From IMG/VR virus record IMGVR_UViG_3300023202_000247, positions 62,001 to 126,000 of that record: a stretch of 64,000 bases of DNA; one strand, given 5' to 3'. The notes under the pieces are model-generated. The model did no database searches. It was not told the origin of the DNA and was given only the letters and a program-made list of their open reading frames with translations. Positions within the stretch are counted from its first letter, which is position 1. Every line of letters starts with the position of its first letter. Both the position numbers and the translations under genes were made by a program. Shown in pieces: positions 10,070 through 55,068 of this stretch.

Positions 10070-10684
10070 AGATGCTCCGTTGGTTTGCAAAGCCTCAGAG
10101 CCAGCAGTGTGACGTTACTGCTTAAAATTTTTACAAAGGGATGCTGTGCTCTTACAGACCTCATCCTAAAGTATCGTAGCACAGTATGAAGTGTCGTGCA
10201 CAAATGCAGTAAGCGGTTGCTATGATGGGTTGGTTTGTAAAGATAATATAAGTATCGTAGCAGAAAGTGCAACTAGCAGGCGTTGGTTTGCAAAGGACGC
10301 TGTGCTCTTAAAAAGTCACAGACGATCTGTGTGTAGTGAAATCGGAGAAAAATGACCGAAAAAGAACTGAAACATTATGTTCAGAACAACCTGGGGGATG
10401 GTGGTTTCATTGAAAAATCCGAAGGATACTGCCTCATAGGCGAATTCAATGGTCCAGTTCGACATGTTTACGGATTCGGTAGAACATGGGCCCAAGCATA
10501 TGAATCCGTCTTCAAAAAAAATCTAAACTGATGCTTAATGCTGGCATCACAAAAAGAGGTCACAGACAAGTATCGTAGTTAGATGGAGCCTCAGTGGTAA
10601 CGCAGAACGTCTTCATAGATCAAATACAGTGACAGCCTCGTCTCAATTTTTACAAAGGATGCTGTGCTCCTAAAAGTCACAGAC
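10059..10684 (+). CRISPR. degenerate CRISPR-like array (motifs gtatcgtagc, gttggtttgcaaag, and hairpin repeat caaaggatgctgtgctcctaaaagtcacagac)
   Basis: gtatcgtag at 10059,10171,10252,10570; gttggtttgYaaag at 10079,10229,10282; hairpin repeat at 10134-10159,10291-10323,10653-10684, stub 10559-10567; irregular spacing. Confidence 0.5.
10352..10531 (+). CDS. 59-aa hypothetical protein inside the repeat region
   Basis: RBS ggag, MTEKELKHYVQNN...KKNLN*; below ORF-track cutoff. Confidence 0.6.
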   Translation: MTEKELKHYVQNNLGDGGFIEKSEGYCLIGEFNGPVRHVYGFGRTWAQAYESVFKKNLN

Positions 10685-10695
10685 AACAATTTACA

Positions 10696-10878
10696 ATGAG
10701 TACACTTCCTAGAGTTACTTTCAATACAGAAGATGGGCTAGAAAAGCACGGTAATGTGTTGCTTCGTCAGGAGCCGAACCTAATCGTGCATGTAAAGGAT
10801 GAACCAGAAGCTATTTGGCTTGTCCCAATTTCATCCTGCGTAAAGCAACAGGAGAAAAAGAAAAAGAAGAAGGCATGA
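10696..10878 (+). CDS. hypothetical protein
   Basis: ORF track. Confidence 0.55.
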   Translation: MSTLPRVTFNTEDGLEKHGNVLLRQEPNLIVHVKDEPEAIWLVPISSCVKQQEKKKKKKA

Positions 10879-11135
10879 AATATCTGCTATTAATAATAGC
10901 AGCATCAATTGTCAGTTGTACAGCACCTACCTCGTACGCTAGTCCGAGTGTAGGTGCTTGGCATTGGTGCCAAGAAACTTGTACCGAGCGCTCCAATAAC
11001 GGTGCTTGTACGAACTTTTACGTATCAGAGTGTGAGCGCTATGCTCATACATCTGAAGATGATGCCATTCAAATGGAAGAACAGGCATGCCTTGATAAAG
11101 GATATTCTGCTATTGATTGTGAATACTCACGATGA
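10875..11135 (+). CDS. Cys-rich putative lipoprotein
   Basis: MKYLLLIIAASIVSC signal/lipobox-like. Confidence 0.55.
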   Translation: MKYLLLIIAASIVSCTAPTSYASPSVGAWHWCQETCTERSNNGACTNFYVSECERYAHTSEDDAIQMEEQACLDKGYSAIDCEYSR

Positions 11136-11764
11136 ATGATAAATATATTAAGATAAAAGATGCGCGCGAGCGTAGAATAAAAAACAACCTGTGTATCACT
11201 TGTGGTTTGATTCCACCACGAAAAGATCGACGTATGTGTGTTGATTGTTCGGACAAGCGATTGAAATATGAGGCAGAGCTTCGCTTGCGTGCCACTGAAG
11301 AAAAACGTAAGAAGCGTAATGCTGTTAACAGAAAGCTCAATAGAACTTTTATCGAGCGCGGCATATGTCCAAATTGTTACAAGCGTCCATTGGAAGAGGG
11401 TAAAAAATCTTGTTCCAAATGCCTAAAGGGTGCACGAGACAGGGCTAAATATCCTTTGCGTTTGCCAAGAGGGGGTATGTCATTGTTCATGGGCGAGTAT
11501 AAAGCTTTAACCCAAGAACAGTTTCATAATTTTTACAAGGCTGTCGAACGTAAAGGCAGCGCTGCAAACTTCGAATCATACCTATCCGAACTAGAGTCCA
11601 AAGTCTACCGTGCCCGCATCGATGGCACATCTATGGAAGCAATTGCTAAAGACATTGGATATACTAGACAAGGTGTAGCGTATATCGAAAGAAACATTGC
11701 TAAGAAGTTTGTCGGAAAAGTTGGCAAACTCAAACTCTCCGATTTGAGGAACAATGGAACTTGA
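11132..11764 (+). CDS. Zn-finger plus sigma70 region-4-like HTH protein (similar architecture to 2509..3015)
   Basis: four CxxC pairs; LSELESKVY..SMEAIAKDIGYTRQGVAYIE. Confidence 0.7.
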   Translation: MNDKYIKIKDARERRIKNNLCITCGLIPPRKDRRMCVDCSDKRLKYEAELRLRATEEKRKKRNAVNRKLNRTFIERGICPNCYKRPLEEGKKSCSKCLKGARDRAKYPLRLPRGGMSLFMGEYKALTQEQFHNFYKAVERKGSAANFESYLSELESKVYRARIDGTSMEAIAKDIGYTRQGVAYIERNIAKKFVGKVGKLKLSDLRNNGT

Positions 11765-11822
11765 TCAGTTGTAGTAATGAAATGTGTTTCCGCAGAAGAT
11801 CCTAGCTAGAAGAGGTTTAAAC

Positions 11823-12260
11823 ATGGAAAAGCTAAGATTAGAGATTGACTGTGATGATGACAAGATGTATTACAAGTGGGATACGGATGAATTGCATAAT
11901 CCATATGGTCCAGCAGTTGAATTTGTAAGTGGAACTAAAGAATGGTGGGTAAACGGAAATCGTCACCGAGAAGATGGTCCAGCAATTGAATATGCAAATG
12001 GACATAAAGAGTGGTATCTAAACGGTAAACGTCATCGGGAAGATGGTCCAGCAATTGAATATGCAAATGGATCTAGAGAATGGTATCTAAACGGTAAACG
12101 TCATCGTGAAGATGGTCCAGCTTTTGAACATGCATATGGATCTAAAGAATGGTGGGTAAACGGTGTCGAATTTACAGAGGAAGAATTCAACAGTCGTCAC
12201 TCTTGTACCAGCAAGATTGTTAAGATTGACGGAAAACGCTACAAGTTAGAAGAGATTTGA
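11823..12260 (+). CDS. HREDGPA-repeat (MORN-like beta-hairpin) protein, copy 1
   Basis: MEKLRLEID cap, 23-aa HREDGPA repeats, IDGKRYKLEE cap. Confidence 0.85.
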   Translation: MEKLRLEIDCDDDKMYYKWDTDELHNPYGPAVEFVSGTKEWWVNGNRHREDGPAIEYANGHKEWYLNGKRHREDGPAIEYANGSREWYLNGKRHREDGPAFEHAYGSKEWWVNGVEFTEEEFNSRHSCTSKIVKIDGKRYKLEEI

Positions 12261-12262
12261 AA

Positions 12263-12754
12263 ATGGAAAAGCTGCGAGTAGAAATTGACTGTGATGGTAC
12301 AAAAAAGTATTACAAGTGGGATACGTGTGAACTACATAATCCGTATGGTCCAGCAATTGAATATGAAAATGGAGATAAATCTTGGTATCTAAACGGTAAA
12401 CTTCATCGTGAAGATGGTCCAGCAATTGAATGGACAGATGGACATAAAGAGTGGTGGATAAACGGTAAAGTTCATCGTGAGGATGGTCCAGCTGTTGAAT
12501 TTGCAAATGGAGATAAATGTTGGTATCTAAACGGCAAACGTCACCGAGAAGATGGCCCAGCTGTTGAATACGCAAATGGATCTAAATTTTGGTATGTAAA
12601 CAGTAAACGTCATCGTGAAGATGGTCCAGCAATTGAATGGGCAAATGGACATAAAGAGTGGTATGTAAATGGTGTCGAATTGACAAAGAAAGAATTTCAC
12701 AATCGTCACTCTTGTAAAAGATTGTTAATATTGACGGAAAACGTTACAAGCTAG
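12263..12754 (+). CDS. HREDGPA-repeat protein, copy 2 (C-cap frameshifted)
   Basis: four repeats; C-cap DNA present but out of frame after ~12716. Confidence 0.8.
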   Translation: MEKLRVEIDCDGTKKYYKWDTCELHNPYGPAIEYENGDKSWYLNGKLHREDGPAIEWTDGHKEWWINGKVHREDGPAVEFANGDKCWYLNGKRHREDGPAVEYANGSKFWYVNSKRHREDGPAIEWANGHKEWYVNGVELTKKEFHNRHSCKRLLILTENVTS

Positions 12755-12767
12755 AAGAGGTTTAAAC

Positions 12768-13208
12768 ATGGAAAAGCTACGAGTAGAGATTGACTGTCAT
12801 GGTAACAAGATGTATTACAAGTGGGATACGGATGAACTGCATAATCCATATGGTCCAGCTGTTGAAGGTGCAGATGGAGATAAAGAATGGTATCTAAACG
12901 ATAAGCTTCACCGAGAAGATGGCCCTGCTATTGAAGGTGCAGATGGAGATAAAGAATGGTATCTAAACGATAAGCTTCACAGAGAAGATGGTCCAGCAGT
13001 TGAATATGCATATGGACATAAAGAGTGGTATGTAAACGGTAAACGTCATCGTGAGGGTGGTCCTGCTGTTGAACATGCAGATGGATATAAAGAATGGTAT
13101 GTAAATGGTACCAAACTGACAGAAGAAGAGTTCAACAGTCGTCACTCATTTTGTACCAGCAAGATTGTAGAGATTGACGGAAAACGTTACAAGCTAGAAG
13201 AAGTTTGA
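12768..13208 (+). CDS. HREDGPA-repeat protein, copy 3
   Basis: same architecture. Confidence 0.85.
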   Translation: MEKLRVEIDCHGNKMYYKWDTDELHNPYGPAVEGADGDKEWYLNDKLHREDGPAIEGADGDKEWYLNDKLHREDGPAVEYAYGHKEWYVNGKRHREGGPAVEHADGYKEWYVNGTKLTEEEFNSRHSFCTSKIVEIDGKRYKLEEV

Positions 13209-13211
13209 AAG

Positions 13212-13652
13212 ATGGAAAAGCTAAGATTAGAGATTGACTGTGATGGTACAAAAAAGTATTACAAGTGGGATACGGATGAGTATCATAATCCATATGGTCC
13301 AGCTATTGAATATGCAAATGGATATAAAGAGTGGCGGGTAAACGGTAAACGTCATCGTGAAGATGGCCCTGCTATTGAAGGTGTAAATGGAACTAAATTT
13401 TGGTATCTAAACGGTAAACGTCATCGTGAAGATGGTCCAGCAATTGAATTTGTAAATGGATCTAGAGAATGGTGGGTAAACGGTAAACGTCATCGTGAAG
13501 ATGGTCCAGCTTTTGAACATGCAGATGGATATAAAGAATGGTGGATAAATGATACCAAACTTACAGAGGCAGAGTTCAACAATCGTCACTCATCTTGTAC
13601 CGGAAAGATTGTTAAGATTGACGGAAAACGTTACAAGCTAGAAGAAGTTTGA
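13212..13652 (+). CDS. HREDGPA-repeat protein, copy 4
   Basis: same architecture. Confidence 0.85.
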   Translation: MEKLRLEIDCDGTKKYYKWDTDEYHNPYGPAIEYANGYKEWRVNGKRHREDGPAIEGVNGTKFWYLNGKRHREDGPAIEFVNGSREWWVNGKRHREDGPAFEHADGYKEWWINDTKLTEAEFNNRHSSCTGKIVKIDGKRYKLEEV

Positions 13653-13655
13653 AAG

Positions 13656-14096
13656 ATGGAAAAGCTAAGATTAGAGATTGACCATCATGGTACAAAAAAA
13701 TATTACAAGTGGGATACGAATGAACTGCATAATCCATATGGTCCAGCTGTTGAATATGCAAATGGATATAAAGCTTGGTGGATAAACGGTAAACGTCATC
13801 GTGAAGATGGCCCTGCTATTGAAAGTGTAAATGGAACTAAATTTTGGTATCTAAACAATAAGCGTCATCGTGAAGATGGTCCAGCTATTGAACATGCAGA
13901 TGGACATAAATCTTGGTATCTAAACGATAAACTTCATCGTGAAGATGGTCCAGCTTTTGAACATGCAGATGGATATAAAGAATGGTATGTAAATGGTACC
14001 AAACTGACAGAAGAAGAGTTCAACAGTCGTCACTCATCTTGTACCAGCAAGATTGTGGAGATTGACGGAAAACGTTACAAGCTAGAAGAAGTTTGA
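13656..14096 (+). CDS. HREDGPA-repeat protein, copy 5
   Basis: same architecture. Confidence 0.85.
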   Translation: MEKLRLEIDHHGTKKYYKWDTNELHNPYGPAVEYANGYKAWWINGKRHREDGPAIESVNGTKFWYLNNKRHREDGPAIEHADGHKSWYLNDKLHREDGPAFEHADGYKEWYVNGTKLTEEEFNSRHSSCTSKIVEIDGKRYKLEEV

Positions 14097-14099
14097 AAG

Positions 14100-14498
14100 A
14101 TGGAAAAGCTAAGATTAGAGATTGACTGTGATGGTACAAAAAAGTATTACAAGTGGGATACGTATGAACTGCATAATCCATATGGTCCAGCTATTGAATA
14201 TGCAGATGGAGATAAATTTTGGTATGAATTTGCAGATGGAGATAAAGCTTGGTATCTAAACGGCAAACGTCATCGTGAGGATGGCCCAGCTTTTAAATAT
14301 GCAAATGGACATAAAGAATGGTATGTAAATGGTAAACTTCATCGTGAAGATGGTCCAGCTATTGAATATGCAGATGGAGATAAAGCTTGGTGGATAAATG
14401 ATACCAAACTTACAGAGGAAGAATTCAATAGTCGTCACTCTTGTGCTGGTAAAGTTGTGGAGATTGATGGAAAACGTTACAAACTAGAAGAAGTTTGA
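14100..14498 (+). CDS. HREDGPA-repeat protein, copy 6 (internal in-frame deletion)
   Basis: KFWY-EFADG junction lacks part of one repeat. Confidence 0.85.
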   Translation: MEKLRLEIDCDGTKKYYKWDTYELHNPYGPAIEYADGDKFWYEFADGDKAWYLNGKRHREDGPAFKYANGHKEWYVNGKLHREDGPAIEYADGDKAWWINDTKLTEEEFNSRHSCAGKVVEIDGKRYKLEEV

Positions 14499-14501
14499 AA
14501 T

Positions 14502-14979
14502 ATGGAAAAGCTAAGATTAGAGATTGACTGTGATGGTACAAAAAAGTATTACAAGTGGGATACGTGTGAATTGCATAATACATATGGTCCAGCTGTTGAA
14601 TATGCAGATGGAGATAAATCTTGGTATGTAAACAATAAGCTTCACAGAGAAGATGGTCCAGCTGTTGAAGATGCAGATGGATATAAATTTTGGTATCTAA
14701 ACAGCAAGCTTCATCGTGAGGATGGTCCAGCTGTTGAAGGTGCAAATGGAGATAAAGTTTGGTATGTAAACGGCAAGCTTCATCGGGAAGATGGCCCTGC
14801 TATTGAAGATGCAGATGGAGATAAATTTTGGTCCTGCTGTTGAATTGGAAGATGGAACTAAAGAATGGTATGTAAATGGTACCAAACTGACAGAAGAAGG
14901 GTTTAACAATCGTTACTCATCTTGTACCAGCAAGATTGTAGAGATTGATGGAAAACGTTACAAGCTAGAAGAAGTTTGA
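14502..14979 (+). pseudogene. HREDGPA-repeat protein, copy 7, frameshifted
   Basis: deletion at ~14830 joins ttttgg to tcctgct, splitting it into ORFs 14502..14843 and 14791..14979. Confidence 0.8.
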
Positions 14980-15008
14980 AAGATGGAAAAGCTTCAAGAG
15001 GATATACG

Positions 15009-16283
15009 ATGAGCACAGTTGTAGTAATGAAATGTGTTTCCGCAGAAGATCATCCCAAGGCTGATGCCCTGCGCCTTTATCAATTTTCTCCCGGCGATGG
15101 TCAAGAGAATGTACAAATCATTGCCAACCTGGAAAATGTATATCAGGTAGGTGATCATGCAATCATTGCCAATATTGGTTGTATTCTCAAGGAAGATAAT
15201 CTAAATGTCAAGCCTGCTAAGTTTCGTGGTATTCCTTCATATGGAATAGCAATGGGTAAGACTGATAAGCCTGTAGGTACTGATCTAACCGATGAGTATT
15301 GCATCGAGCAAAAATCGCCGTTGCCCATTCAGAAGTGGCCGAAGATTGAGAGTCTTTCCAGCGTCCGTCAATATATGGTAGAGGTTGATGAGTTTCATCC
15401 AATCGATTACCGACCAAAGATAAAGATTGATGGGGCAAACACTTCGGTACATGTCAAGGATGACACTGTCATGGCTCAAAGCCGTGTCAAGATGCTCACT
15501 GTAGATGATGACCTGTACGGTTTTGCCAAGTGGGTTGATGCGAATCGAGACTACTGGTCTGCAATTTCTGACGATTACTTAGTTGTTTTCGGAGAATGGG
15601 CAGGTGAAGGAATTCAAAAGCGCAACGCTGCTGTAGCTAGCGTTAGTAAAAAGTTTTTTGCGGTTTTTGCAATTTACGATGGTAAGGGATATATTGTAAG
15701 CCCCGAGAAAATTCGTGCCCTTTTGCCAAAGCATGAAGACATTTACGTTTTGCCATGGGCCGATGAGAAACATACATTTGATTTCACGGACCGTGACAAG
15801 TTGCGTGTAACGGCTGAGCATGTAGCAAAGCAAGTTGCAATCGTGGAAGAGTGCGACCCTTGGGTCAAGAGCACATTTGGTTTGGAAGGTACGGGCGAAG
15901 GTCTAGTTTACTACCCTTTGCTCGAAGGCGATGATTATATTGATCAGTTTGCATTCTCCAATTTCGTTTTCAAAGCCAAAGGCGAAAAGCACAAGGTAAA
16001 GAAAACGAAGAAGCCCGTGCCCATTGATCCGGAAGTTGCTGAATCCATTGCGGAATTCGTTGATACATTTGTCACGGAGAATCGTTTGGAGCAAATGGCA
16101 ACGGAGTTGGGCTGTGGTTATGATATGAAAAAGACTGGTCAGTTTATCAAGCTTGTCATAGCTGACGTTCAAAAGGAAAGCGTTGATGAATTGAAAGCTT
16201 CCAAGTTGGAATGGAAAGATGTGGTGAAACCGGTGAGTAGCGCAGCCGTATCTTGGTGGCAAAAGAAATGTAAAGAAATATAA
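15009..16283 (+). CDS. ATP-dependent RNA ligase (Rnl2-like) with N-terminal tRNA-binding OB domain
   Basis: HPKADALR..FRGIPSYG OB domain; KIDGAN, FGEWAG, FAVFAI, GEGLV, FKAK motifs; RBS gagga before ATG 15009. Confidence 0.85.
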   Translation: MSTVVVMKCVSAEDHPKADALRLYQFSPGDGQENVQIIANLENVYQVGDHAIIANIGCILKEDNLNVKPAKFRGIPSYGIAMGKTDKPVGTDLTDEYCIEQKSPLPIQKWPKIESLSSVRQYMVEVDEFHPIDYRPKIKIDGANTSVHVKDDTVMAQSRVKMLTVDDDLYGFAKWVDANRDYWSAISDDYLVVFGEWAGEGIQKRNAAVASVSKKFFAVFAIYDGKGYIVSPEKIRALLPKHEDIYVLPWADEKHTFDFTDRDKLRVTAEHVAKQVAIVEECDPWVKSTFGLEGTGEGLVYYPLLEGDDYIDQFAFSNFVFKAKGEKHKVKKTKKPVPIDPEVAESIAEFVDTFVTENRLEQMATELGCGYDMKKTGQFIKLVIADVQKESVDELKASKLEWKDVVKPVSSAAVSWWQKKCKEI

Positions 16284-16337: not shown

Positions 16338-16844
16338 ATGGAAAAGCTACGAGTAGAGATTGATTATCATGGTACCAAGAGATATTACAAATGGGATACG
16401 TGTGAACTACATAATCCGTATGGTCCAGCAATTGAATATGAAAATGGATCTAAATGTTGGTATCTAAACGGTAAATATCATCGAGAAGATGGTCCAGCTA
16501 TTGAATATGCAAATGGATCTAAATTTTGGTATGTAAACGGTAAACGTCACCGAGAAAATGGTCCAGCTATTGAATATGCAAATGGAGATAAATATTGGTA
16601 TTTAAACGATAAGTGTCATCGTGAAGATGGTCCAGCTATTGAATATTCAAATGGATATAAAGAGTGGTGGGTAAACGATAAGCGTCATCGTGAGGATGGT
16701 CCAGCTGTTGAATATGTAAATGGATCTAAAGAATGGTGGATAAATGATACCAAACTGACAGAGGAAGAGTTTAACAATCGTCACTCTTATGCTGGCAAAG
16801 TTGTGGAGATTGACGGAAAACGTTACAAGCTAGAAGAGGTTTGA
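16338..16844 (+). CDS. HREDGPA-repeat protein, copy 8
   Basis: same architecture, four repeats; followed by relic start MEKLRL* at 16846. Confidence 0.85.
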   Translation: MEKLRVEIDYHGTKRYYKWDTCELHNPYGPAIEYENGSKCWYLNGKYHREDGPAIEYANGSKFWYVNGKRHRENGPAIEYANGDKYWYLNDKCHREDGPAIEYSNGYKEWWVNDKRHREDGPAVEYVNGSKEWWINDTKLTEEEFNNRHSYAGKVVEIDGKRYKLEEV

Positions 16845-42118: not shown

Positions 42119-42298
42119 GGTAGAAGCGTCATGTTTGGCATTGCTCGGGACGTTCTTTGGTGCTATTGGTCTATGGATCATTGGCGTCCCGAGCAAATCT
42201 TTTTCCGAATTCTTCCCAATCTTAGCAGCGTTAGCTGTGTATAATATGTCCATAGCATATAATATTGGTGATATTGAACTATAATAATAGGAGAAAGT

Positions 42299-42556
42299 TT
42301 GTTTGACGACATAGGTGATTTACTAAAGCAATTACCATCTGCAAGAGATGATCTTACCAAGATGATTCTGTCTTATCTAAAAGACAAAGGCTTATCTCCT
42401 GAAGAATTAGTAATTGCACTTCTTAGTATATCTGCGCTTATTGCGTCGAGCACTGGTTGTGAGGAAAAAACATATAAGAAGCTTGCGGAGATAGCATTTG
42501 CAATTGAAGAGGCGAATGTCACTCTAATCAAACAAAAACAAAGTAAGGCTAACTAA
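42299..42556 (+). CDS. hypothetical protein
   Basis: RBS aggag, TTG start. Confidence 0.6.
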   Translation: MFDDIGDLLKQLPSARDDLTKMILSYLKDKGLSPEELVIALLSISALIASSTGCEEKTYKKLAEIAFAIEEANVTLIKQKQSKAN

Positions 42557-42566
42557 AGGAGAAGCC

Positions 42567-42734
42567 ATGGCAAAGAAAAAGAAGAGAAACTATCTCTTGG
42601 CTTTGGTTGCGAAAAATGATCCTGCGAGGTACAGGACACGCACCGTAAAGCCAGAGAAGGGTAAGGGACGTAAAAATCGCCCGCGAAGGAAAGACTGGAG
42701 CAAGAAGATTGATGACCTTGATTATGCAGCTTAA
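42567..42734 (+). CDS. arfA: ArfA-like alternative ribosome rescue factor (55 aa)
   Basis: RBS aaggag; RNYLLALVAKNDPARYRTRTVKPEKGKG resembles ArfA [25 protein letters not shown]; not in ORF track. Confidence 0.65.
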   Translation: MAKKKKRNYLLALVAKNDPARYRTRTVKPEKGKGRKNRPRRKDWSKKIDDLDYAA

Positions 42735-42768
42735 TATAGTTTAAGCTATATAATCAAGGTCATCAATC
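42707..42768 (+). promoter_or_regulatory. long hairpin over the arfA-like stop codon (candidate RNase III site)
   Basis: perfect 19-bp arms 42707-42725 / 42750-42768 plus inner agcttaa/ttaagct. Confidence 0.7.
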
Positions 42769-42784
42769 ATTAGGAAAGAGTAAA

Positions 42785-43180
42785 ATGAGAAACAGTTTGA
42801 CAATCAACGCAGAGACAAAAGTAATCCTCGAAAAACTCAAAGAGAATCGTCAAAAGCATATTGAGATTTATAATGAGGCCATGAAGAATTACAAGAGTAA
42901 AGTTATAGAACTCTTGAAAGAAAAGATTGAAGAGGTCAATTCTTCTGAAAAGATTGAAGCCATATCTTTTCATCTAGCCCTTCCGCAGTCGTTTGTAAAA
43001 GAATATGATATGGCAATTAGAGCGCTAGAGTATAATGTTGATGATACGATTCAATTGGATCAAGATCAGATTGAAAAGTATATCAACGACAACTGGCAGT
43101 GGATGGATACATTCCTCGTTGGTTCTATGAACTATTCTGCTCAAGCCGCAGAGTATGGGGCGTCGAGAGGATTACGATGA
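42785..43180 (+). CDS. hypothetical protein
   Basis: ORF track. Confidence 0.7.
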   Translation: MRNSLTINAETKVILEKLKENRQKHIEIYNEAMKNYKSKVIELLKEKIEEVNSSEKIEAISFHLALPQSFVKEYDMAIRALEYNVDDTIQLDQDQIEKYINDNWQWMDTFLVGSMNYSAQAAEYGASRGLR

Positions 43181-43512
43181 GTGGTAACGCAGCTACGGAT
43201 GAAGAGCTTTTTGGGCTGTTGGAACTACAGCTTAAAAGCGTCGAAGGTACAATGAGAGCAGCTGCCTTCTGGCTCGAGATGTTTGATGATGCTAGTGGAG
43301 AAGTGGATAAACGTCAAATAACAGTTTGTTCACATATTTTGAAACGTTTTCTTCAGCTTCAAAAGAATGTTGATGAATTGAAGTTGGGTAGAAAGCTTAA
43401 TGGTGAAGAGTATCTGCTAATCAGAGCTATGAACAATGAAGATGTCAATCATGACACAATTAAAAAAGTTTTGTCTGGAGAAGAAGGCAAAAGAAAAAGT
43501 GAGGTTAACTAA
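43177..43512 (+). CDS. hypothetical protein
   Basis: ATGA-coupled start MSGNAAT. Confidence 0.6.
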   Translation: MSGNAATDEELFGLLELQLKSVEGTMRAAAFWLEMFDDASGEVDKRQITVCSHILKRFLQLQKNVDELKLGRKLNGEEYLLIRAMNNEDVNHDTIKKVLSGEEGKRKSEVN

Positions 43513-44126
43513 TGCGTAGAAGAGAGTTTATTGGCAGTGCCGTTGCTGGTGGCCTAGTTGTGTCTGGCATATCACCTGATGTGAATGCTGTTGAAGTTAA
43601 CTCAGACTATGAAGAATATAAGCGATGGCGATGTAATTACGAAAAGCAAATGTTGCTTGCTGCTATTATTCGAATAAGTCATAAGCATGATAAATATCTA
43701 ACTGGGTGGACACTGTCAGATAATCCATATTATTCGTTTGATGATCTGTGTGATAAGTTTCGTAGTGAATACGCTCGTTGTTCTGTAAGTGATGATAGAG
43801 TCGTTACATTTGATAATGTTATTGCATTACATGAAAGCTATACCTTTCCAGAAAATAATAACTTATATGGTAATACATATATGTATGTACCAAAACGTGG
43901 ATTTGAAGTGACAGGTTGGTATAAGGATGATGGAGAATTCATAACAACTCATGAATACATAAAACAGCGCAGAAAAGCTGGTATAACAGAATCTAATAGA
44001 TTTTATTCTGATTTTCAAATCAAACGTATTGAAGATATAAATGCTATTCATGATAATGAATACATTCAGGAAGCATTCAAGGACTTCAAAATCCACATGA
44101 AAAGAGTGAGGTTAACTAATGCGTAG
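43512..44126 (+). CDS. hypothetical protein with twin-arginine (Tat)-like signal
   Basis: MRRREFIGSAVAGGLVVSG. Confidence 0.6.
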   Translation: MRRREFIGSAVAGGLVVSGISPDVNAVEVNSDYEEYKRWRCNYEKQMLLAAIIRISHKHDKYLTGWTLSDNPYYSFDDLCDKFRSEYARCSVSDDRVVTFDNVIALHESYTFPENNNLYGNTYMYVPKRGFEVTGWYKDDGEFITTHEYIKQRRKAGITESNRFYSDFQIKRIEDINAIHDNEYIQEAFKDFKIHMKRVRLTNA

Positions 44127-44270: not shown

Positions 44271-44738
44271 ATGGATACGGTATTGAATAACCGTTTGGAT
44301 GATTCTCAATTCCTATTTGGCCTTGCAGGTATGATTATGAGAAACATGCAGAAGAAAAAGCGATTCAACGATCATACTCTAGAGGCGACCTCTAAAGTAT
44401 TGAGAGGTTGTCAAAAAATTCTTCTGGAGATGCCTGACGTTACTGTTGCAAAGGACCCTACAGATGGAAACGGCATACCTTTGGAATCCTTCTCTGGAGG
44501 GCAAGTCTTGGTAGATGCTTTGGAGAAATTGACTCATCTGTATCTGAACCAATCAAATAGTAGTCCTCATGTAACGGCAAGGTTGGCCGGGATGATGGTT
44601 GCTTCTTTGGACAGTGGTGAACGGATCACAGATTTTCGCTATGAAGCTCTCGAGCAGATTCTGCAAGCCTGTCAGAGACACTTGCAGAGACACTTGTTCC
44701 ATGAAATGGAAACTAATAAATCATCTCTCAATTCCTGA
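44271..44738 (+). CDS. hypothetical protein
   Basis: ORF track. Confidence 0.6.
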   Translation: MDTVLNNRLDDSQFLFGLAGMIMRNMQKKKRFNDHTLEATSKVLRGCQKILLEMPDVTVAKDPTDGNGIPLESFSGGQVLVDALEKLTHLYLNQSNSSPHVTARLAGMMVASLDSGERITDFRYEALEQILQACQRHLQRHLFHEMETNKSSLNS

Positions 44739-44955
44739 AACAATTGCAGCTGTTTATGATCTTCACGATGATGATATAGATCGCGATCGTGTGGATAAAC
44801 ACATCTCAGAATGCAATGTATGCAAAACGATGATTGATAACGAACGTGAATCCAATCCATTGGTTGGTCTACCAGAGCATGAGCTTGAAGAATTGTGGGA
44901 AAACACCGAGCCACAAGCTGGTGACGGAAAACGTTACAAGCTAGAAGAAGTTTGA
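44599..44955 (+). CDS. small protein with anti-sigma zf-HC2-like motif, fused to an HREDGPA C-cap
   Basis: HISECNVC motif; ends DGKRYKLEEV; start probably ATG 44701. Confidence 0.5.
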   Translation: MLLWTVVNGSQIFAMKLSSRFCKPVRDTCRDTCSMKWKLINHLSIPETIAAVYDLHDDDIDRDRVDKHISECNVCKTMIDNERESNPLVGLPEHELEELWENTEPQAGDGKRYKLEEV

Positions 44956-45046
44956 AAGATTAGAGTTTAACAGTTGTCACTCATCTTGCGCTGGCAAAGT
45001 TGTAGAGATTGACGGAAAACGTTACAAACTAGAAGAAGTTTGAAAT

Positions 45047-45487
45047 ATGGAAAAGCTAAGATTAGAGATTGACCATCATGGTAACAAGAGATACTACAAG
45101 TGGGATACGGATGAGTATCATAATCCATATGGTCCGGCAATTGAATATGCAAATGGACGTAAAGAGTGGTGGGTAAACGATAAGCGTCATCGTGAAGATG
45201 GCCCTGCTATTGAAAGTGCAAATGGATCTAAATCTTGGTATGTAAACAATAAGCTTCATCGAGAAGATGGTCCAGCTATTGAATATGCAAGTGGAGATAA
45301 AGTTTGGTATCTAAACAACAAGCTTCACCGAGAAGATGGTCCTGCTGTTGAATGGGAAGATGGAGATAAATCTTGGTGGATAAACGGTGTCGAATTTACA
45401 GAGGAAGAGTTCAACAATCATCGCTTATCTTGTACCGGAAAGATTGTAGAGATTGATGGAAAACGTTACAAGCTAGAAGAGGTTTGA
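45047..45487 (+). CDS. HREDGPA-repeat protein, copy 9
   Basis: same architecture as 11.8-16.8 kb copies. Confidence 0.85.
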   Translation: MEKLRLEIDHHGNKRYYKWDTDEYHNPYGPAIEYANGRKEWWVNDKRHREDGPAIESANGSKSWYVNNKLHREDGPAIEYASGDKVWYLNNKLHREDGPAVEWEDGDKSWWINGVEFTEEEFNNHRLSCTGKIVEIDGKRYKLEEV

Positions 45488-45490
45488 AAT

Positions 45491-45931
45491 ATGGAAAAGC
45501 TACGAGTAGAAATTGACTGTGATGGTACAAAAAAGTATTACAAGTGGGATACGGATGAATTCCATAATCCGTATGGTCCAGCTGTTGAATATGCAGATGG
45601 AGATAAATTTTGGTATGTAAACGGTAAACGTCATCGTGAAGATGGTCCAGCAGTTGAATTTGCAAATGGAGATAAATTTTGGTATCTAAACGGTAAACTT
45701 CACAGAGATGATGGCCCAGCTTTTGAATATACAAATGGAGATAAATTTTGGTATCTAAATGATAAGCGTCATCGGGAAGATGGTCCAGCAATTGAATGGA
45801 CAAATGGACATAAAGAGTGGTGGATAAATGGTACCAAACTTACAGAAAAAGAGTTCAACAGTCGTCATTCATCTTGTACCGGAAAGATTGTTAAGATTGA
45901 CGGAAAACACTACAAACTAGAAGAGGTTTAA
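45491..45931 (+). CDS. HREDGPA-repeat protein, copy 10
   Basis: same architecture. Confidence 0.85.
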   Translation: MEKLRVEIDCDGTKKYYKWDTDEFHNPYGPAVEYADGDKFWYVNGKRHREDGPAVEFANGDKFWYLNGKLHRDDGPAFEYTNGDKFWYLNDKRHREDGPAIEWTNGHKEWWINGTKLTEKEFNSRHSSCTGKIVKIDGKHYKLEEV

Positions 45932-46127: not shown

Positions 46128-46209
46128 GATGAAGAAACTCAAAGGATGCTGTGCTCCTAAAAGTCACAGACAAACTCAAAGGATGCTGTGCTCCTAAAAG
46201 TCACAGACA
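46128..46209 (+). repeat. two spacer-less tandem 37-nt hairpin repeats (left flank)
   Basis: aaactcaaaggatgctgtgctcctaaaagtcacagac at 46135-46171 and 46172-46208. Confidence 0.9.
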
Positions 46210-46242: not shown

Positions 46243-46704
46243 ATGAAAAATCTAGAAGACATTGGATCTGTTTTTGCTCCCAAAACAGGGGCAAGTGTTT
46301 ATTCGATACTCGAAAATATCTTTGAAGAAAGTAAAGATGTTGCTATCGAGTATCGTTCATTTGTTACAGAATTTCGCAGAGTTGTGGAAGTTATAAATGA
46401 ATATATTAACCGAAACTTTCACCCATCGATAAAAGTTTCAGTAGTAAAAGATGAACGAAATTTTTATCATTTAGTACTTAAAAAAGCTGGCCTGTCTGTT
46501 GCTGGTAAGTATGAATTTAAATTAGGCACGTTTTCCAAACGTAAACAAAATGATCTATGGTACTTTCATTATTGCTCAGAACAGGGCGATGACTATAACA
46601 AATATATACAAATTAAATCAATTAGCGAAATTGAAAATGCTGTAGCTACGGTCCTGTTAGATGAAGAAATATCTAACAGACTGAAAAAATTCGTGTTGTC
46701 ATGA
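46243..46704 (+). CDS. hypothetical protein between identical 82-nt direct repeats
   Basis: RBS gaggt; ORF track. Confidence 0.7.
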   Translation: MKNLEDIGSVFAPKTGASVYSILENIFEESKDVAIEYRSFVTEFRRVVEVINEYINRNFHPSIKVSVVKDERNFYHLVLKKAGLSVAGKYEFKLGTFSKRKQNDLWYFHYCSEQGDDYNKYIQIKSISEIENAVATVLLDEEISNRLKKFVLS

Positions 46705-46707: not shown

Positions 46708-46789
46708 GATGAAGAAACTCAAAGGATGCTGTGCTCCTAAAAGTCACAGACAAACTCAAAGGATGCTGTGCTCCTAAAAGTCACAGACA
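46708..46789 (+). repeat. two spacer-less tandem 37-nt hairpin repeats (right flank)
   Basis: identical to 46128-46209; units 46715-46751 and 46752-46788. Confidence 0.9.
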
Positions 46790-52709: not shown

Positions 52710-52724
52710 GCATGTTCATGACAA

Positions 52725-53534
52725 ATGACTAAAAGTTTTTCTGAGCGTCAAAAAGAGTACGAAAGTGCTTACGACCAAACTATAATAAAAAGAATACCGG
52801 TTATCATCAGGGTAGATGGGAAAAACTTTTCTAAAGTAACGAGGAAATTATCACGTCCTTATTGTCATAAAATGATGCGCACCATGCAAGAAACCATGCT
52901 GTATGTTGCGCGTGATTTGGGCGGATGTGTTTTTGCCTATACTCAAAGTGATGAAATATCATTCGTTCTACGAAACGATCAAGAATTAGACACAGAGCCG
53001 TGGTTTGGCAACCGAACTCAAAAGCTGAGTTCTGTGGTTGCGTCGATGACTACTTATCATTTTAACAACTTGGTAAACAATAGTCTCGATCCTCCGCGAC
53101 TGTGCGGTATGCCCTGCTTTGATGCTCGAACATTCGGTGTGCCCGACTTCAATGAAACGATAAACAATCTATACTTCAGACAAACAGATTGTAGACGAAA
53201 TTCTATTGAGGGAGCTGCTAGAGCTGAGATTAGCAAAAAGGTTGGAAGTAAAACTGCTAGAAAAATGCTTCACAAGAAAAGCATTGATGAGCAGTTAGAT
53301 ATTCTATATGATATGTGTCACATAGATTATGACCAGCACTATCCTGTAGAGTATCGCCATGGATCTGCCGCTTATCGTGCACCATGTGTAACAGATGATG
53401 ACAGCCCCAATAGAACAAAATGGATCATAGATCGAAATCTATCGTTGATGAATAAACAACGAAAATTTCTTTTGACCATTTTAGAATATGGTCAAGATAT
53501 ATTCAGGCCAGAACGTGATATCTCTGAAAATTAA
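52725..53534 (+). CDS. thg1: tRNA(His) guanylyltransferase Thg1-like (3'-5' polymerase)
   Basis: IRVDGKNFSK, YTQSDEISF, FGNRTQKLSS, FDAR, RQTDC.RNS. Confidence 0.92.
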   Translation: MTKSFSERQKEYESAYDQTIIKRIPVIIRVDGKNFSKVTRKLSRPYCHKMMRTMQETMLYVARDLGGCVFAYTQSDEISFVLRNDQELDTEPWFGNRTQKLSSVVASMTTYHFNNLVNNSLDPPRLCGMPCFDARTFGVPDFNETINNLYFRQTDCRRNSIEGAARAEISKKVGSKTARKMLHKKSIDEQLDILYDMCHIDYDQHYPVEYRHGSAAYRAPCVTDDDSPNRTKWIIDRNLSLMNKQRKFLLTILEYGQDIFRPERDISEN

Positions 53535-53892
53535 ACCTGATAAGTTCGATAGTGAGCTTACAGAAAAACAACTTGACGGCATTCAAAGCGTTTTGGAAAA
53601 CTCTTGTACCGGAAGGTTTTGTATAAGCAGATCCAAATTATATGAAAGTGTTAAAGATTTATTAGGCATTACTCTCGAAAAATATAGATTTGAGCGTGAA
53701 ATTACTAAAGCTATAAAGAATGGCAGCTTGAAAGGGTTTGAAACCAGACCCGGTAAGAGTGGTGGCATATGTAAAGCTGGTGTGTTTGACAAGTCTGAAC
53801 AGAAGCATCAGTGTAAGCAGTGTCAAAGATTCGAGCGCGAACTTCAATCGCTGCGAGAGAAGGTGCGGCTCTTAAGTGGACAGCACCCTTGA
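53488..53892 (+). CDS. hypothetical protein
   Basis: ORF track. Confidence 0.6.
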   Translation: MVKIYSGQNVISLKIKPDKFDSELTEKQLDGIQSVLENSCTGRFCISRSKLYESVKDLLGITLEKYRFEREITKAIKNGSLKGFETRPGKSGGICKAGVFDKSEQKHQCKQCQRFERELQSLREKVRLLSGQHP

Positions 53893-53988
53893 CAAAGTCA
53901 ACAGATGAGTTAAGTTGTGGTGACTGGAGTTTACAGCTCCACTGGAATAAAAAAAGTCGCTTGACAAAACCAACAGATGAGTTAGATT
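53889..53988 (+). promoter_or_regulatory. tandem near-identical promoters
   Basis: TTGACA 53889 N16 TAAGTT; TTGACA 53961 N16 TAGATT; both spacers contain caacagatgagt. Confidence 0.7.
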
Positions 53989-53991
53989 GTC

Positions 53992-54516
53992 TTGTATCAG
54001 CAAGGAATATCTCAAATGAGTTACGATAAACAATGTTTACTAAACGACACTGACGAGGATGTATTCTTCGTCGATGATGAAGCCAAGATGCCTGTTTACT
54101 TGAAGGAAATTCGAGACGGGGAATACATTGGCAAGCTTCAGTTCAATGGCACATTGGATTTTGAAGACGGCCTAACGTTCATGATCTTCACTGCCGACAA
54201 GATGGAGGAGGAAATCCAGATTGGTCCGAGTGATCCGAGGCGTTCTTCTCCCCATCGTGATAAGACGATTGAATTGGATAGGAACAGGATTCTGATTCGA
54301 CTCGAACAAAAAGAAGATCGTGATGGAAACATCTATCATTTTGCAGAGGTTCAGTGTCCAATGGCTGTTCTTCATGCACGACGAGGATTGTTTTTCCAGA
54401 TAAACACCAACACTGATGAAATGTGGATCTCTCGGCTCCGAAACCGGATGCGCCGCTTTCACCGAAATTCCGTTGACAGGCAGCCCCATTCGCGCTACGA
54501 TGAGCAGCACGCATAA
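53992..54516 (+). CDS. hypothetical protein
   Basis: probable start ATG 54016 with RBS aagga. Confidence 0.65.
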   Translation: MYQQGISQMSYDKQCLLNDTDEDVFFVDDEAKMPVYLKEIRDGEYIGKLQFNGTLDFEDGLTFMIFTADKMEEEIQIGPSDPRRSSPHRDKTIELDRNRILIRLEQKEDRDGNIYHFAEVQCPMAVLHARRGLFFQINTNTDEMWISRLRNRMRRFHRNSVDRQPHSRYDEQHA

Positions 54517-54970
54517 GGAAAATAAAATGATGAATAAAAATGTACGCTACGGCTACTTTACGGTCGATACGCCCAAAGGCAAAGGATATGTTTGTGTTCG
54601 TTTGCAACGACTCAAGTGTTTCTCAGATACCGCACCTATAAATGCAGAGGCAACCTTTTCTTTTTGCTCTCCAATGGATGCGCCGAAAGAGCCGTCTGAG
54701 CTTGGAAAGAATTTCAAGCGAAAGGCTCGGGCCATTGCGGATTCTCGAGCTGAATCAAATCGTATCAACCAAAAGGTTGAAATTCAGTTCAACCCTTCAA
54801 TTTCGCAAAGTATTCTCTTTAGAGAAATCTTGAACAAGGCGACCCAGGTTGATTCCGAAAAGAAGGATAAAAACGGTCGTCACTACAAAGTTGCTCCAGA
54901 CTGGGTGCGTAATGCTATGAAACAAGAAAGGGTTTCATTTGGGTTGCCCACCTCTAAACCATCAAACTAA
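54416..54970 (+). CDS. hypothetical protein
   Basis: probable start ATG 54528 with RBS aagga. Confidence 0.65.
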   Translation: MKCGSLGSETGCAAFTEIPLTGSPIRATMSSTHKENKMMNKNVRYGYFTVDTPKGKGYVCVRLQRLKCFSDTAPINAEATFSFCSPMDAPKEPSELGKNFKRKARAIADSRAESNRINQKVEIQFNPSISQSILFREILNKATQVDSEKKDKNGRHYKVAPDWVRNAMKQERVSFGLPTSKPSN

Positions 54971-54989
54971 GATCATGAGCGTATTGTAA

Positions 54990-55068
54990 CAAAGGATGCT
55001 ACGTTTCTTAAAACTGTAGACTATCGCGAGATGCAATAAAGGATGCTGTGCTCCTAAAAGTCACAGAC
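54990..55068 (+). CRISPR. mini-array: repeat-16 nt-repeat
   Basis: caaaggatgctacgtttcttaaaactgtagac 54990-55021, tatcgcgagatgcaat, aaaggatgctgtgctcctaaaagtcacagac 55038-55068. Confidence 0.55.

What the first reader, a model, noticed from the sequence alone, without database searches (positions are those of the whole stretch)
10134..55068. Type V-like 37-nt hairpin repeat dispersed over 45 kb, with compensatory changes
Seen: core aaaggatgctgtgctcctaaaagtcacagac or close variants at 10134, 10291, 10653, 46135, 46172, 46715, 46752, 54990 and 55038, all on +, all intergenic. The stem ctgtg/cacag becomes ctac/gtag in the 54990 copy, keeping the bulged T and terminal AC, which points to selection on RNA structure. 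Known: tracr-independent type V repeats (Cas12j, Cas12m) end in hairpin + AC. Inference: a distributed set of single crRNAs or effector-processing sites rather than one array; the effector could be the dCas12f or a gene outside the window.
Basis: partly seen in the sequence, partly recalled or inferred. Interest (0 to 1): 0.72.

Follow-up and report, generated by a model that had tools for sequence, protein, structure and literature searches.

The report
Scattered Cas12m CRISPR repeats in phage
A giant phage carries its own nuclease-dead Cas12m CRISPR system, and intact copies of that system's repeat also sit alone or in back-to-back pairs just upstream of a dozen phage genes, which suggests the phage uses a CRISPR protein on its own transcripts.

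Summary
The 31-nt core occurs 6 times exactly in the window (0 expected), with variants at 10134, 10291 and 54990. All copies are on the + strand and intergenic.

The window is part of a 321-kb jumbo-phage contig.
- a 671-aa Cas12m-like gene, supported by sequence and predicted fold, with a RuvC triad reading D-A-D;
- two leader-plus-array units using a sister repeat, whose spacer content differs between strains.

The dispersed "B" copies conserve exactly the ~31 nt that form the mature Cas12m crRNA handle. Handle stem 2 covaries across five repeat types. The repeat occurs with a Cas12m homologue elsewhere and is absent from the loci of homologues of the window's Cas12f-like protein.

The copies are therefore solitary, tandem and mini-array repeat units of a phage-borne type V-M system, placed in the leaders of + strand genes.

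Their function is inferred, not shown. Most likely the phage's own Cas12m binds and processes them, either tagging mRNAs or producing spacerless RNAs. RNA anti-CRISPR decoys, regulatory guides and recombination relics remain open. No RNA data could be listed.

Verdict: a new variant of a known kind.

The parts
7522..9003 (+). It is probably not the partner of the repeat.
   Evidence: PADLOC Cas12u3 6e-30 and Cas12f 1e-32. PDB Cas12f 9nzq 1.2e-18, where LNRG aligns to VDMG. Homologue loci lack the repeat.
10134..10159 (+). Decayed repeat copy. The 5' half is intact and the 3' strand of stem 2 is lost.
   Evidence: E 0.003.
10286..10323 (+). Variant B unit with three changes: a T>C between the stems, a C>T in stem 1 that leaves a G-U pair, and one extra A in the loop. 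Both stems stay paired. It lies 28 nt upstream of the ATG of a 59-aa ORF (10352-10531). A sister strain has it rebuilt by recombination with a canonical copy.
10537..10567 (+). Strongly decayed repeat-like stretch that keeps ATGCTG...AAAAG...GTCACAGAC. It is followed by the AAGTATCGTAG unit. A paralogous copy lies at genome 57,771-57,801.
10648..10684 (+). Canonical B unit (31-nt core at 10654-10684), 11 nt upstream of ATG 10696.
46135..46208 (+). Two canonical B units head to tail with no spacer (37-nt period), 34 nt upstream of the ATG of a 153-aa ORF (46243-46704).
   Evidence: (family D10). Identical in two other samples.
46715..46788 (+). A second spacerless tandem pair. It begins 11 nt after the stop codon of the 153-aa ORF. 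The 82-nt block is 100% identical to the first pair, so the ORF is flanked repeat-gene-repeat. About 130 nt and a terminator-like hairpin (my reading of the sequence) follow before ATG 46993.
54985..55021 (+). Array-type (A-like) variant unit with stem 2 CTACG/TGTAG. Stem 1 is kept through a G-U pair.
55032..55068 (+). Canonical B unit 10 nt after the previous unit, forming a pseudo-mini-array with a spacer too short to guide. It lies 78 nt upstream of the RtcB ATG (55147), with an 11-bp hairpin in between.

Best explanation
What the copies are (about 0.9 confidence). They are extra copies of the CRISPR repeat of a phage-encoded, nuclease-dead type V-M (Cas12m-like) system. The effector gene lies at genome 41,906-43,921. 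Its two leader-array units lie at genome 44,040-44,183 and 44,690-45,380, about 18 kb upstream of the window.

How they work (inferred, about 0.45 confidence):
1. Each dispersed unit lies in the sense orientation in the leader of a + strand gene, so it is transcribed as part of that gene's mRNA.
2. Its 31-nt core folds into the Cas12m handle: stem 1 AGGA/TCCT interleaved with stem 2 CTGTG/CACAG, ending in AC.
3. The phage's own Cas12m-like protein binds this handle and, as published for Cas12m, cuts just 5' of it.
4. The cut separates the downstream cistron from upstream RNA and leaves Cas12m clamped on its 5' end. The next ~17-20 nt then occupy the guide channel. In several copies this stretch contains the Shine-Dalgarno sequence or the start codon.
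5. The first unit of each spacerless tandem pair is released as a guide-less handle RNA.

Net effect. A set of accessory genes becomes coupled to Cas12m after transcription. Those genes are small unknown ORFs, an HTH_17 regulator, a transglycosylase operon and RtcB. Free Cas12m is buffered at the same time. Two conserved units near the array additionally look like fixed regulatory guides.
For: Effector:
- PADLOC Cas12u1 1.8e-47; PDB Cas12m 23vw 1.2e-24.
- AlphaFold model pLDDT 82. Its top four fold matches are all Cas12m structures, E 3e-21 to 1.6e-15, TM by target 0.64-0.70, against about 1e-8 for Cas12f.
- The RuvC II glutamate is replaced by alanine.
- Only this ORF and the Cas12f-like ORF are type V-like in the 321 kb.

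Array:
- A duplicated leader and 36-nt repeats spaced 66-82 nt.
- Spacer content differs between strains.
- No Cas1 and no anti-repeat on the minus strand.

Handle:
- Conservation of dispersed copies starts at about -31 and their 5' 6 nt vary. This matches the published Cas12m crRNA: a ~30-nt handle with a disordered 5' end, -22..-17 pairing with -8..-3, and processing within the repeat (PMC10442227, PMC11013384).
- Covariation is shown.

Link between A and B repeats:
- An A/B hybrid and a B' unit sit in the same transcription unit as the mini-array next to cas12m.

Placement:
- All copies are on + and intergenic. At 7 of the 9 loci with an intact unit the last unit ends 11-78 nt before a start codon (30, 57, 28, 11, 34, 78 and 13 nt). 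At genome 32,487 only a 24-codon ORF follows. At 46788 the next called ATG is 204 nt away.

Co-occurrence:
- A 33% identical Cas12m homologue has repeat-spacer-repeat followed directly by a gene.

Absence elsewhere:
- No representative bacterial genome carries the repeat pattern.
Against: - No transcript, processing or binding data exist. No RNA run was listed and the complex predictor did not fold the protein-RNA pair.
- The dispersed B copies are identical to each other, so covariation proves selection on the repeat family, not on each dispersed copy.
- Three to five copies are visibly decayed (10134; genome 34,363; genome 171,963; the two partial copies).
- Strains differ by recombination at the copies, which fits neutral turnover.
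- Why the array (A) and dispersed (B) classes stay distinct is unexplained if one protein binds both.
- Whether Cas12m binding at a 5' leader changes expression has never been shown.
Confidence: 0.45

Rival explanations
1. RNA anti-CRISPR (Racr-type) decoys. The B units are repeat mimics that soak up the Cas12m of a rival plasmid, phage or host. The compensatory stem-2 difference keeps them orthogonal to the phage's own A-type system. The small ORFs behind them could be protein anti-CRISPRs on the same transcript.
For: - Solitary repeat units in phages are an established decoy class and can share a bicistronic RNA with an acr gene (PMC10651486).
- Three units are followed by too little sequence to guide: the first unit of each tandem pair (no spacer) and the 54985 unit (10 nt).
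- Several downstream ORFs are small and have no known family.
- V-M systems are typical of plasmids, which are plausible rivals (PMC11656645).
- Two homogeneous classes differ mainly in stem 2.
Against: - No array or genome with a B-type repeat was found in 185,579 species genomes or in the viral collection. Classic Racrs match a host system, and 83% do so in the paper.
- The phage itself encodes the matching effector family.
- Published Cas12m contacts to the stems are mostly to the backbone (PMC10442227), so orthogonality is doubtful.
- A B-spacer-B mini-array with a full-length spacer exists.
Confidence: 0.2
2. Regulatory crRNA-like guides (crlRNA, CreR or scaRNA type). Each unit plus the ~18 nt after it directs the DNA-binding Cas12m to partially matching DNA, in the phage or in the host, to repress transcription.
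For: - Cas12m silences by binding alone (PMC11013384).
- The B-spacer-B mini-array at genome 57,883-57,992 is 100% identical in five samples. The first 15 nt of its spacer match 13/15 to codons 11-15 of the HTH_17 gene 163 nt downstream (local p = 0.01).
- The guide after the B' unit at genome 44,183 matches 14/16 to a site 35 nt downstream, at the start of the 101-aa gene (0 of 200 shuffles).
- A conserved array spacer matches the phage's own 682-aa late-region ORF 34/34.
Against: - The other nine or so post-repeat 'guides' have no better-than-chance match in the 321 kb.
- Most overlap ribosome-binding sites or start codons, so they are constrained by coding.
- The three candidate protospacers share no PAM (flanks TGA, CTT, ATC).
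- Three units have no usable spacer.
Confidence: 0.12
3. Mostly neutral relics. Repeat units were scattered from the array by recombination and cassette shuffling, now serve only as recombination substrates, and have no RNA-level role.
For: - Hybrid A/B unit.
- 82-nt identical blocks flank one gene.
- A strain has one copy rebuilt from another, and joints appear in other samples.
- Several copies are decayed.
- A 34-nt segment is inverted between two paralogous intergenic units.
Against: - Eleven to twelve copies keep all or nearly all 31 handle positions while their flanks differ completely.
- Changes in variant copies preserve pairing through G-U pairs.
- Strict sense orientation and placement in leaders just upstream of start codons.
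- An unrelated GC-rich contig has a solitary unit in the same kind of place.
Confidence: 0.13
4. The units are bound by the Cas12f-like protein encoded at 7522-9003.
For: - Three units lie 1.1-1.7 kb downstream of that gene.
- Its RuvC I aspartate is replaced by asparagine, so it too would be a binder rather than a cutter.
Against: - Cas12f/TnpB relatives use long tracrRNA or omega-type scaffolds, not a 31-nt pseudoknot handle.
- Loci of its homologues lack the repeat within 5 kb on each side where the contig allowed.
- The repeat architecture matches Cas12m structures and co-occurs with Cas12m homologues.
- A separate ~210-nt non-coding stretch after its operon is a better candidate for its own guide RNA.
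Confidence: 0.04

Closest known systems
Type V-M CRISPR-Cas12m (formerly V-U1) of plasmids and prophages (Wu 2022; Omura 2023, PMC10442227; Bigelyte 2024, PMC11013384)
   Same: - Effector fold and sequence family.
- Defective RuvC triad.
- 36-nt repeat ending in GAC, with interleaved stems that form the ~30-nt handle.
- No tracrRNA-like anti-repeat and no adaptation genes.
- Array directly downstream of the gene.
   Different: - Carried by a lytic-looking jumbo phage.
- The D-A-D triad is not among the published clades (HEK/HQK, HDD, DED/NED, DND).
- The array carries a perfect self-match.
- At least 11 further intact repeat units are dispersed over 140 kb of the same genome, in gene leaders.
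Viral solitary repeat units / RNA anti-CRISPRs (Racr; Faure 2019; Camara-Wilpert 2023, PMC10651486)
   Same: - Intergenic single repeats in a virus.
- Sense orientation upstream of small genes.
- Spacerless units.
- Co-transcription with a protein gene is possible.
   Different: - Racrs mimic the host's repeats and are 'not associated with cas genes'. Here the virus encodes the cognate effector and array, and no host array with this repeat was found.
- Many copies per genome, some of them in tandem.
Virus-borne CRISPR mini-arrays used in inter-virus conflict (Medvedeva 2019; reviewed in PMC11656645)
   Same: - One-spacer arrays at genome 44,040-44,146 and 57,883-57,992.
- One spacer resembles, but does not equal, a gene of the phage itself, as expected if it targets a relative's allele.
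   Different: - Those mini-arrays borrow host Cas proteins, whereas here the effector is phage-encoded.
- Most units here have no spacer at all.
Repeat-like regulatory RNAs (scaRNA, CreA/CreR, crlRNA; Shmakov 2023, bioRxiv 10.1101/2023.03.03.530964)
   Same: - Standalone repeat plus a partially matching guide that represses a nearby gene without cleavage.
- Fixed rather than turning over.
   Different: - Those lie inside or beside cas loci in cellular genomes, typically one or two per locus.
- Here only two of about twelve units show a candidate nearby target.
Cas12a excision of crRNAs from longer mRNAs, as used in engineered single-transcript arrays (my own knowledge of Campa 2019; not checked here)
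   Same: A type V effector recognises its handle inside an mRNA and cuts 5' of it.
   Different: That case is engineered. A natural genome-wide arrangement of handles in mRNA leaders has not, to my knowledge, been described.

Membership tests
Type V-M CRISPR-Cas (Cas12m) | Effector belongs to the Cas12m sequence and fold family | tested here: met
   PADLOC Cas12u1 1.8e-47. PDB Cas12m 1.2e-24. Foldseek top four hits are Cas12m, E down to 3e-21, TM by target 0.64-0.70.
Type V-M CRISPR-Cas (Cas12m) | Non-canonical or inactive RuvC site (a DNA binder, not a cutter) | tested here: inconclusive
   By alignment the triad is D-A-D, with VIAKLN aligned to VLEEFT. Relatives read N-E-D, Q-N-D and D-E-D. 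Activity was not assayed.
Type V-M CRISPR-Cas (Cas12m) | Adjacent CRISPR array of ~36-nt repeats with variable spacers | tested here: met
   Nine clear 36-nt units plus decayed terminal units, spaced 66-82 nt. Spacer sets differ between three strains.
Type V-M CRISPR-Cas (Cas12m) | Repeat folds into a stem plus pseudoknot handle of ~30 nt; the 5' end is dispensable | tested here: met
   Covariation. Conservation begins at -31. Positions correspond to the published -22..-17: -8..-3 pairing (PMC10442227).
Type V-M CRISPR-Cas (Cas12m) | No tracrRNA; the effector processes its own pre-crRNA | tested here: inconclusive
   No anti-repeat on either strand of the 321 kb. Processing itself is not testable without RNA data.
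Racr / solitary repeat unit decoys | The repeat matches the CRISPR repeat of the host or of another element that threatens the phage | tested here: not met
   The pattern covering the A, B and L017 types is absent from 185,579 species genomes and from IMG/VR. There is one metagenome hit, itself a solitary unit. The host is unknown, so absence is weak evidence.
Racr / solitary repeat unit decoys | Not associated with cas genes on the same element | tested here: not met
   The same contig encodes the Cas12m-like effector and array.
Racr / solitary repeat unit decoys | Inhibits the cognate Cas effector | not testable with these tools
   Needs a targeting or interference assay.
Regulatory crRNA-like RNAs (crlRNA/CreR/scaRNA) | The guide portion partially matches a promoter or gene that is thereby repressed | tested here: inconclusive
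   Two units have locally significant partial matches downstream. The others have none. No common PAM.
Cas12f / TnpB-type guide RNA (for the 7522-9003 protein) | The repeat or scaffold co-occurs with the protein family | tested here: not met
   Loci of homologues P0015 and P0016 lack the repeat.
Cas12j (CasPhi) of huge phages | Effector of the Cas12j family | tested here: not met
   Cas12j structures rank 30th or lower, E about 1e-5, TM 0.2.

The most novel reading that the evidence does not exclude
A jumbo phage has domesticated a nuclease-dead Cas12m as a regulator of its own genome. Dispersed crRNA handles in mRNA leaders define a post-transcriptional regulon. Fixed mini-array guides, together with a conserved self-matching array spacer, add DNA-level repression of phage genes. 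The result would be a CRISPR effector working as a programmable phage gene-expression factor rather than as immunity.
Probability: 0.3. Interest if true: 0.85.

Novelty: new variant of a known kind. Interest (0 to 1): 0.64.

Why it matters
- Cas12m is known as a plasmid and prophage weapon that silences rivals by binding DNA.
- Here the same handle RNA is written about a dozen times into the leaders of a phage's own genes, alongside a conserved self-matching spacer.
- If the phage's Cas12m acts on these sites, this would be a natural case of a CRISPR effector repurposed for viral gene regulation or RNA processing. It would also be a ready-made compact system: a 671-aa binder, a 31-nt handle and two possibly orthogonal handle variants.
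- If the units are instead decoys, it would be the first Racr-like set aimed at type V-M, carried by an element that uses a sister system itself.
- Either outcome can be tested directly with simple co-expression assays.

Tried and rejected
- Rfam at gathering thresholds over the window plus 32 kb upstream found only tRNA-Met and no CRISPR-DR family.
- Megablast of 10 kb against the phage collection gave no match. tblastn of the effector found one weak hit, Virus Rctr197k at 22.7% identity.
- Repeat patterns and the effector gave nothing in IMG/VR.
- Spacer target hunts gave nothing: the leader-1 spacer in GTDB genomes and IMG/VR, and an AT-rich spacer in IMG/VR.
- RNA runs: none was listed. 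DNA contigs of four runs showed only strain polymorphism, plus reads from paralogous copies.
- Complex prediction on protein plus B RNA was not folded by the tool and gives no evidence either way.
- Single-sequence folding energies of the 36-40-nt units are not distinguishable from shuffles. The case rests on covariation.
- Sigma-70 and terminator consensus scans near the copies were at chance level. The array leader occurs only at the two arrays.
- I looked for a second Cas12m paralogue that could explain the B class and found none.
- A 14.5-kb slice around a distant homologue's array showed no dispersed copies, so dispersal is not a family-wide trait.
- The 153-aa ORF flanked by tandem units has no informative relatives.

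Full report
**Observation**

The 31-nt core AAAGGATGCTGTGCTCCTAAAAGTCACAGAC occurs six times exactly in the window, at 10654, 46141, 46178, 46721, 46758 and 55038. All six are on the + strand, and shuffles give none.

Three variant copies exist:
- 10134 is decayed and has lost the 3' strand of the stem.
- 10291 has three changes: a T>C between the stems, a C>T in stem 1 that leaves a G-U pair, and one extra A in the loop. Both stems stay paired.
- 54990 has CTACG/TGTAG where the others have CTGTG/CACAG.

None overlaps a gene called on the corresponding JGI contigs.

**Where the window lies**

The window is bases 62,001-126,000 of a 321,461-bp IMG/VR virus contig that CheckV rates 75% complete. 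Nearly all genes are on the + strand. An nhmmer scan of the whole contig finds about 29 copies. All are on +, with no significant minus-strand hit, so there is no anti-repeat.

**The CRISPR locus (genome coordinates; window = genome - 62,000)**

ORF 41,906-43,921 encodes 671 aa and is a Cas12m homologue:
- PADLOC Cas12u1 1.8e-47 and PDB Cas12m 23vw 1.2e-24.
- AlphaFold model with pLDDT 82. Its four best PDB fold matches are all Cas12m complexes, E 3e-21 to 1.6e-15, TM by target 0.64-0.70. Cas12f, TnpB and Cas12j rank far behind.

The RuvC motifs read D (ALDIGW), A (VIAKLN where Cas12m has VLEEFT) and D (NHDLNYAK). Relatives read N-E-D, Q-N-D and D-E-D.

Directly downstream the order is as follows:
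- A ~90-nt leader.
- An A-type repeat, GTAACAAAGGATGCTACGCTCCTTAAAGTTGTAGAC.
- A 34-nt spacer.
- A hybrid repeat made of the A 5' half and the B 3' half. It cannot form stem 2.
- A B' unit with no spacer.
- A 101-aa gene.
- A second copy of the leader.
- Nine clear A repeats plus decayed terminal units, spaced 66-82 nt.

In three strains carrying the identical effector, the main array differs. One has seven extra GC-rich spacers and one lacks an internal duplication. This is therefore a real CRISPR array. No Cas1 is present.

**The repeat is a Cas12m handle**

Published Cas12m crRNAs have these properties (PMC10442227; PMC11013384):
- A ~30-nt repeat-derived handle whose 5' 7 nt are disordered.
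- A pseudoknot helix between -22..-17 and -8..-3, stacked on a second stem.
- No tracrRNA.
- Maturation by a cut inside the repeat, upstream of the scaffold.

In our repeat, stem 2 pairs -23..-19 with -7..-3. Stem 1 (AGGA/TCCT) interleaves with it.

| Alignment | Cells paired | Covariation | Control |
|---|---|---|---|
| 16 copies | 93.8% | three stem-2 pairs change on both sides | slid registers give 35-51% |
| 6 repeat types | stem 2 100% | 4 of 5 stem-2 pairs change on both sides | 0/500 shuffles reach the covariation score |

The six types are the A array repeat, the dispersed B unit, the 54990 variant, and three from other contigs:
- The mini-array behind a 33% identical homologue (L017; stem CTCAC/GTGAG).
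- A solitary unit on an unrelated GC-rich contig (L029).
- The array of a 25% identical homologue (L034).

These represent only a handful of independent events, but they all agree. Among dispersed copies the 31 handle positions are conserved, while the 6 nt upstream vary (TTTTAC, AAACTC, GGTAAC, TGCAAT). That is the expected pattern if only the mature handle matters.

**Which protein**

Only two type V-like ORFs exist in the 321 kb.

The window's 493-aa protein (7522-9003) is Cas12f/V-U3-like. Its RuvC I aspartate is replaced by asparagine (LNRG against VDMG), and E and D are kept.

Its 26-28% identical homologues sit in a conserved HTH / Cas12f-like / ~215-aa / HTH_3 operon. These loci were read to 5 kb on each side where the contig allowed, and none has the repeat. 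The repeat does accompany Cas12m homologues. The partner is therefore the Cas12m-like protein.

**Anatomy of the dispersed units**

| Position (g = genome; otherwise window) | Arrangement | What follows |
|---|---|---|
| g32,452 | single B' unit | a 24-codon ORF |
| g44,148 | B' unit | 30 nt, then the 101-aa gene |
| g57,883-57,992 | B, 36-nt spacer, B with a 2-nt loop deletion | 57 nt, then an HTH_17 gene and an SPL-like gene |
| 10286 | variant B unit | 28 nt, then a 59-aa ORF |
| 10648 | canonical B unit | 11 nt, then ATG 10696 |
| 46135-46208 | spacerless tandem pair | 34 nt, then a 153-aa ORF |
| 46715-46788 | spacerless tandem pair, beginning 11 nt after that ORF's stop | ~130 nt and a terminator-like hairpin (my reading of the sequence), then the transglycosylase / PP2C operon |
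| 54985 and 55032 | A-like unit, 10 nt, B unit | a hairpin, then RtcB at 78 nt |
| g171,961 | decayed unit | 13 nt, then a 157-aa ORF |

Decayed copies lie at 10134, g34,363 and g171,961. Partial copies lie at 10537 and g57,771.

Further points:
- The two tandem blocks are 82 nt long and 100% identical, giving a repeat-gene-repeat arrangement.
- The array leader is not found at the dispersed sites, so they must be transcribed from other promoters or by read-through.
- In several copies the Shine-Dalgarno sequence or the start codon falls within the first ~24 nt after the handle. This is the segment Cas12m would hold as a 'guide'.

**Do the units encode guides?**

I scanned the genome with the 18 nt following every unit. 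There was no enrichment over shuffled guides. A local test within 1 kb gave two exceptions:
- The B' unit at g44,183 matches 14/16 to a site 35 nt downstream (0 of 200 shuffles).
- The spacer of the g57,918 mini-array matches 13 of its first 15 nt to codons 11-15 of the HTH_17 gene 163 nt downstream (p = 0.01).

That mini-array is 100% identical in five samples, unlike the main array.

Separately, one array spacer matches the phage's own genome 34/34. It is AT-rich, present in all three strains with a readable main array, and duplicated in this one. The match is at 260,162-260,195 on the minus strand, inside a 682-aa ORF in the large-gene (tail-like) region. Its flank is TTTTATC.

The three candidate protospacers share no PAM.

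**Turnover**

A sister strain has the 10291 variant rebuilt by a canonical copy together with its upstream flank. The HTH gene at 9529-9825 is deleted in that strain. The same joints appear in contigs of other runs.

**Interpretation**

Shown:
- The dispersed copies belong to the repeat family of a phage-encoded type V-M system.
- The handle structure is under selection in that family.
- The copies are sense-oriented leader elements.

Inferred:
- They are bound, and cut on their 5' side, by the phage's Cas12m-like protein.

I rank the readings as follows.

| Reading | Probability |
|---|---|
| Cis-acting 'handle tags' on mRNAs, with spacerless by-products, acted on by the phage's own protein | about 0.45 |
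| Racr-type decoys | 0.2 |
| Neutral relics | 0.13 |
| Regulatory guides as the general role | 0.12 |
| Cas12f-like protein as partner | 0.04 |

- Decoys are favoured by the spacerless tandems and by known racr-acr bicistrons (PMC10651486). They are disfavoured by the absence of any B-type array elsewhere and by the presence of the cognate effector on the phage.
- Regulatory guides may well hold for the two conserved units near the array, even if not in general.

**Comparison and novelty**

V-M systems are described on plasmids and some prophages (PMC11656645). SRUs, mini-arrays and repeat-like regulators are all known. My paper searches found no description of a virus that carries the effector, a variable array, a conserved self-matching spacer, and about a dozen intact handles embedded in the leaders of its own genes. 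Those searches were narrow, so this is a negative result, not proof of novelty. I class the finding as a new variant of a known kind.

**Limits**

- No RNA or binding data.
- The host is unknown.
- The contig is incomplete.
- Relatives are few and sit on short contigs.
- The p-values for the local matches are post hoc.

Noticed in passing
genome 44,875-44,909 and 45,089-45,122 (L009:14876-14909, 15089-15122) versus genome 260,162-260,195 (L020:4162-4195, minus strand): A conserved array spacer, duplicated in this strain, matches the phage's own 682-aa ORF 34/34. The ORF lies in the large-gene, tail-like region. The flank upstream of the protospacer is TTTTATC.
   Followed up: partly
window 9822-10070: A sigma-70-like promoter (TTGACA-17-TAGATT) is followed by ~210 nt of GC-richer non-coding sequence after the Cas12f-like operon. 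The stretch contains GCTACGATAC, the complement of the recurring GTATCGTAGC motif. It could be the guide or tracr-like RNA of the Cas12f-like protein.
   Followed up: partly
window 10059, 10171, 10252, 10570, 17768; genome 46,232 and 57,804: The motif AAGTATCGTAG recurs 7-8 times on + in intergenic DNA. In two places it directly follows a decayed repeat end (GTCACAGAC). Its function is unknown.
   Followed up: partly
window 10600-10633 versus genome 57,834-57,867 (L010:7834-7867): A 34-nt segment between a decayed repeat and a canonical B unit is inverted between two otherwise identical paralogous intergenic units, with 2 substitutions.
   Followed up: partly
L025:145-729 (sister strain); corresponds to window 6705-7525: In one strain an HD / Cas3_HD-domain ORF (194 aa) sits immediately upstream of the Cas12f-like gene. 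The window has two unrelated ORFs there.
   Followed up: partly
genome 41,371-41,916 (L009:11371-11916) and L016:264-974: A T5orf172/MUG113-domain ORF overlaps the start of the Cas12m-like gene, both here and next to the 86% identical homologue. It may be a conserved partner. A microbial PARG gene lies 5 kb upstream.
   Followed up: no
window 11784-14979, 16338-16844, 44599-45931: About a dozen tandem paralogous ~146-aa genes with an internal 69-nt periodicity (GxxNGxK-like repeats). They break the assemblies of the other samples.
   Followed up: no
window 14976-16283, 25246-25319, 35612-37126, 52725-53534, 55147-57549: A dense RNA-repair set: an RNA ligase with a tRNA-binding domain, tRNA-Met, a CCA-adding-type enzyme with an HD domain, a Thg1-like guanylyltransferase, and an RtcB that carries a weak, below-cutoff LAGLIDADG match suggesting an intein-like insert.
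   Followed up: partly
window 39008-42118: A 1036-aa AAA ATPase ORF interrupted by an intein splicing domain.
   Followed up: no
L029:636-671 (minus strand; metagenome contig JACCDR011051941.1): A solitary unit of the same handle type (stem CTCAC/GTGAG) lies directly after a tRNA gene cluster and ~35 nt before an ORF, on an unrelated GC-rich phage-like contig.
   Followed up: partly
genome 44,076-44,109, 44,794-44,838, 45,013-45,051 (L009): Three spacers end in the same GTCGAGCC(A/G)G. In strain L013 this 10-mer stands alone between two repeats. This points to array rearrangement by recombination rather than Cas1-Cas2 acquisition.
   Followed up: no
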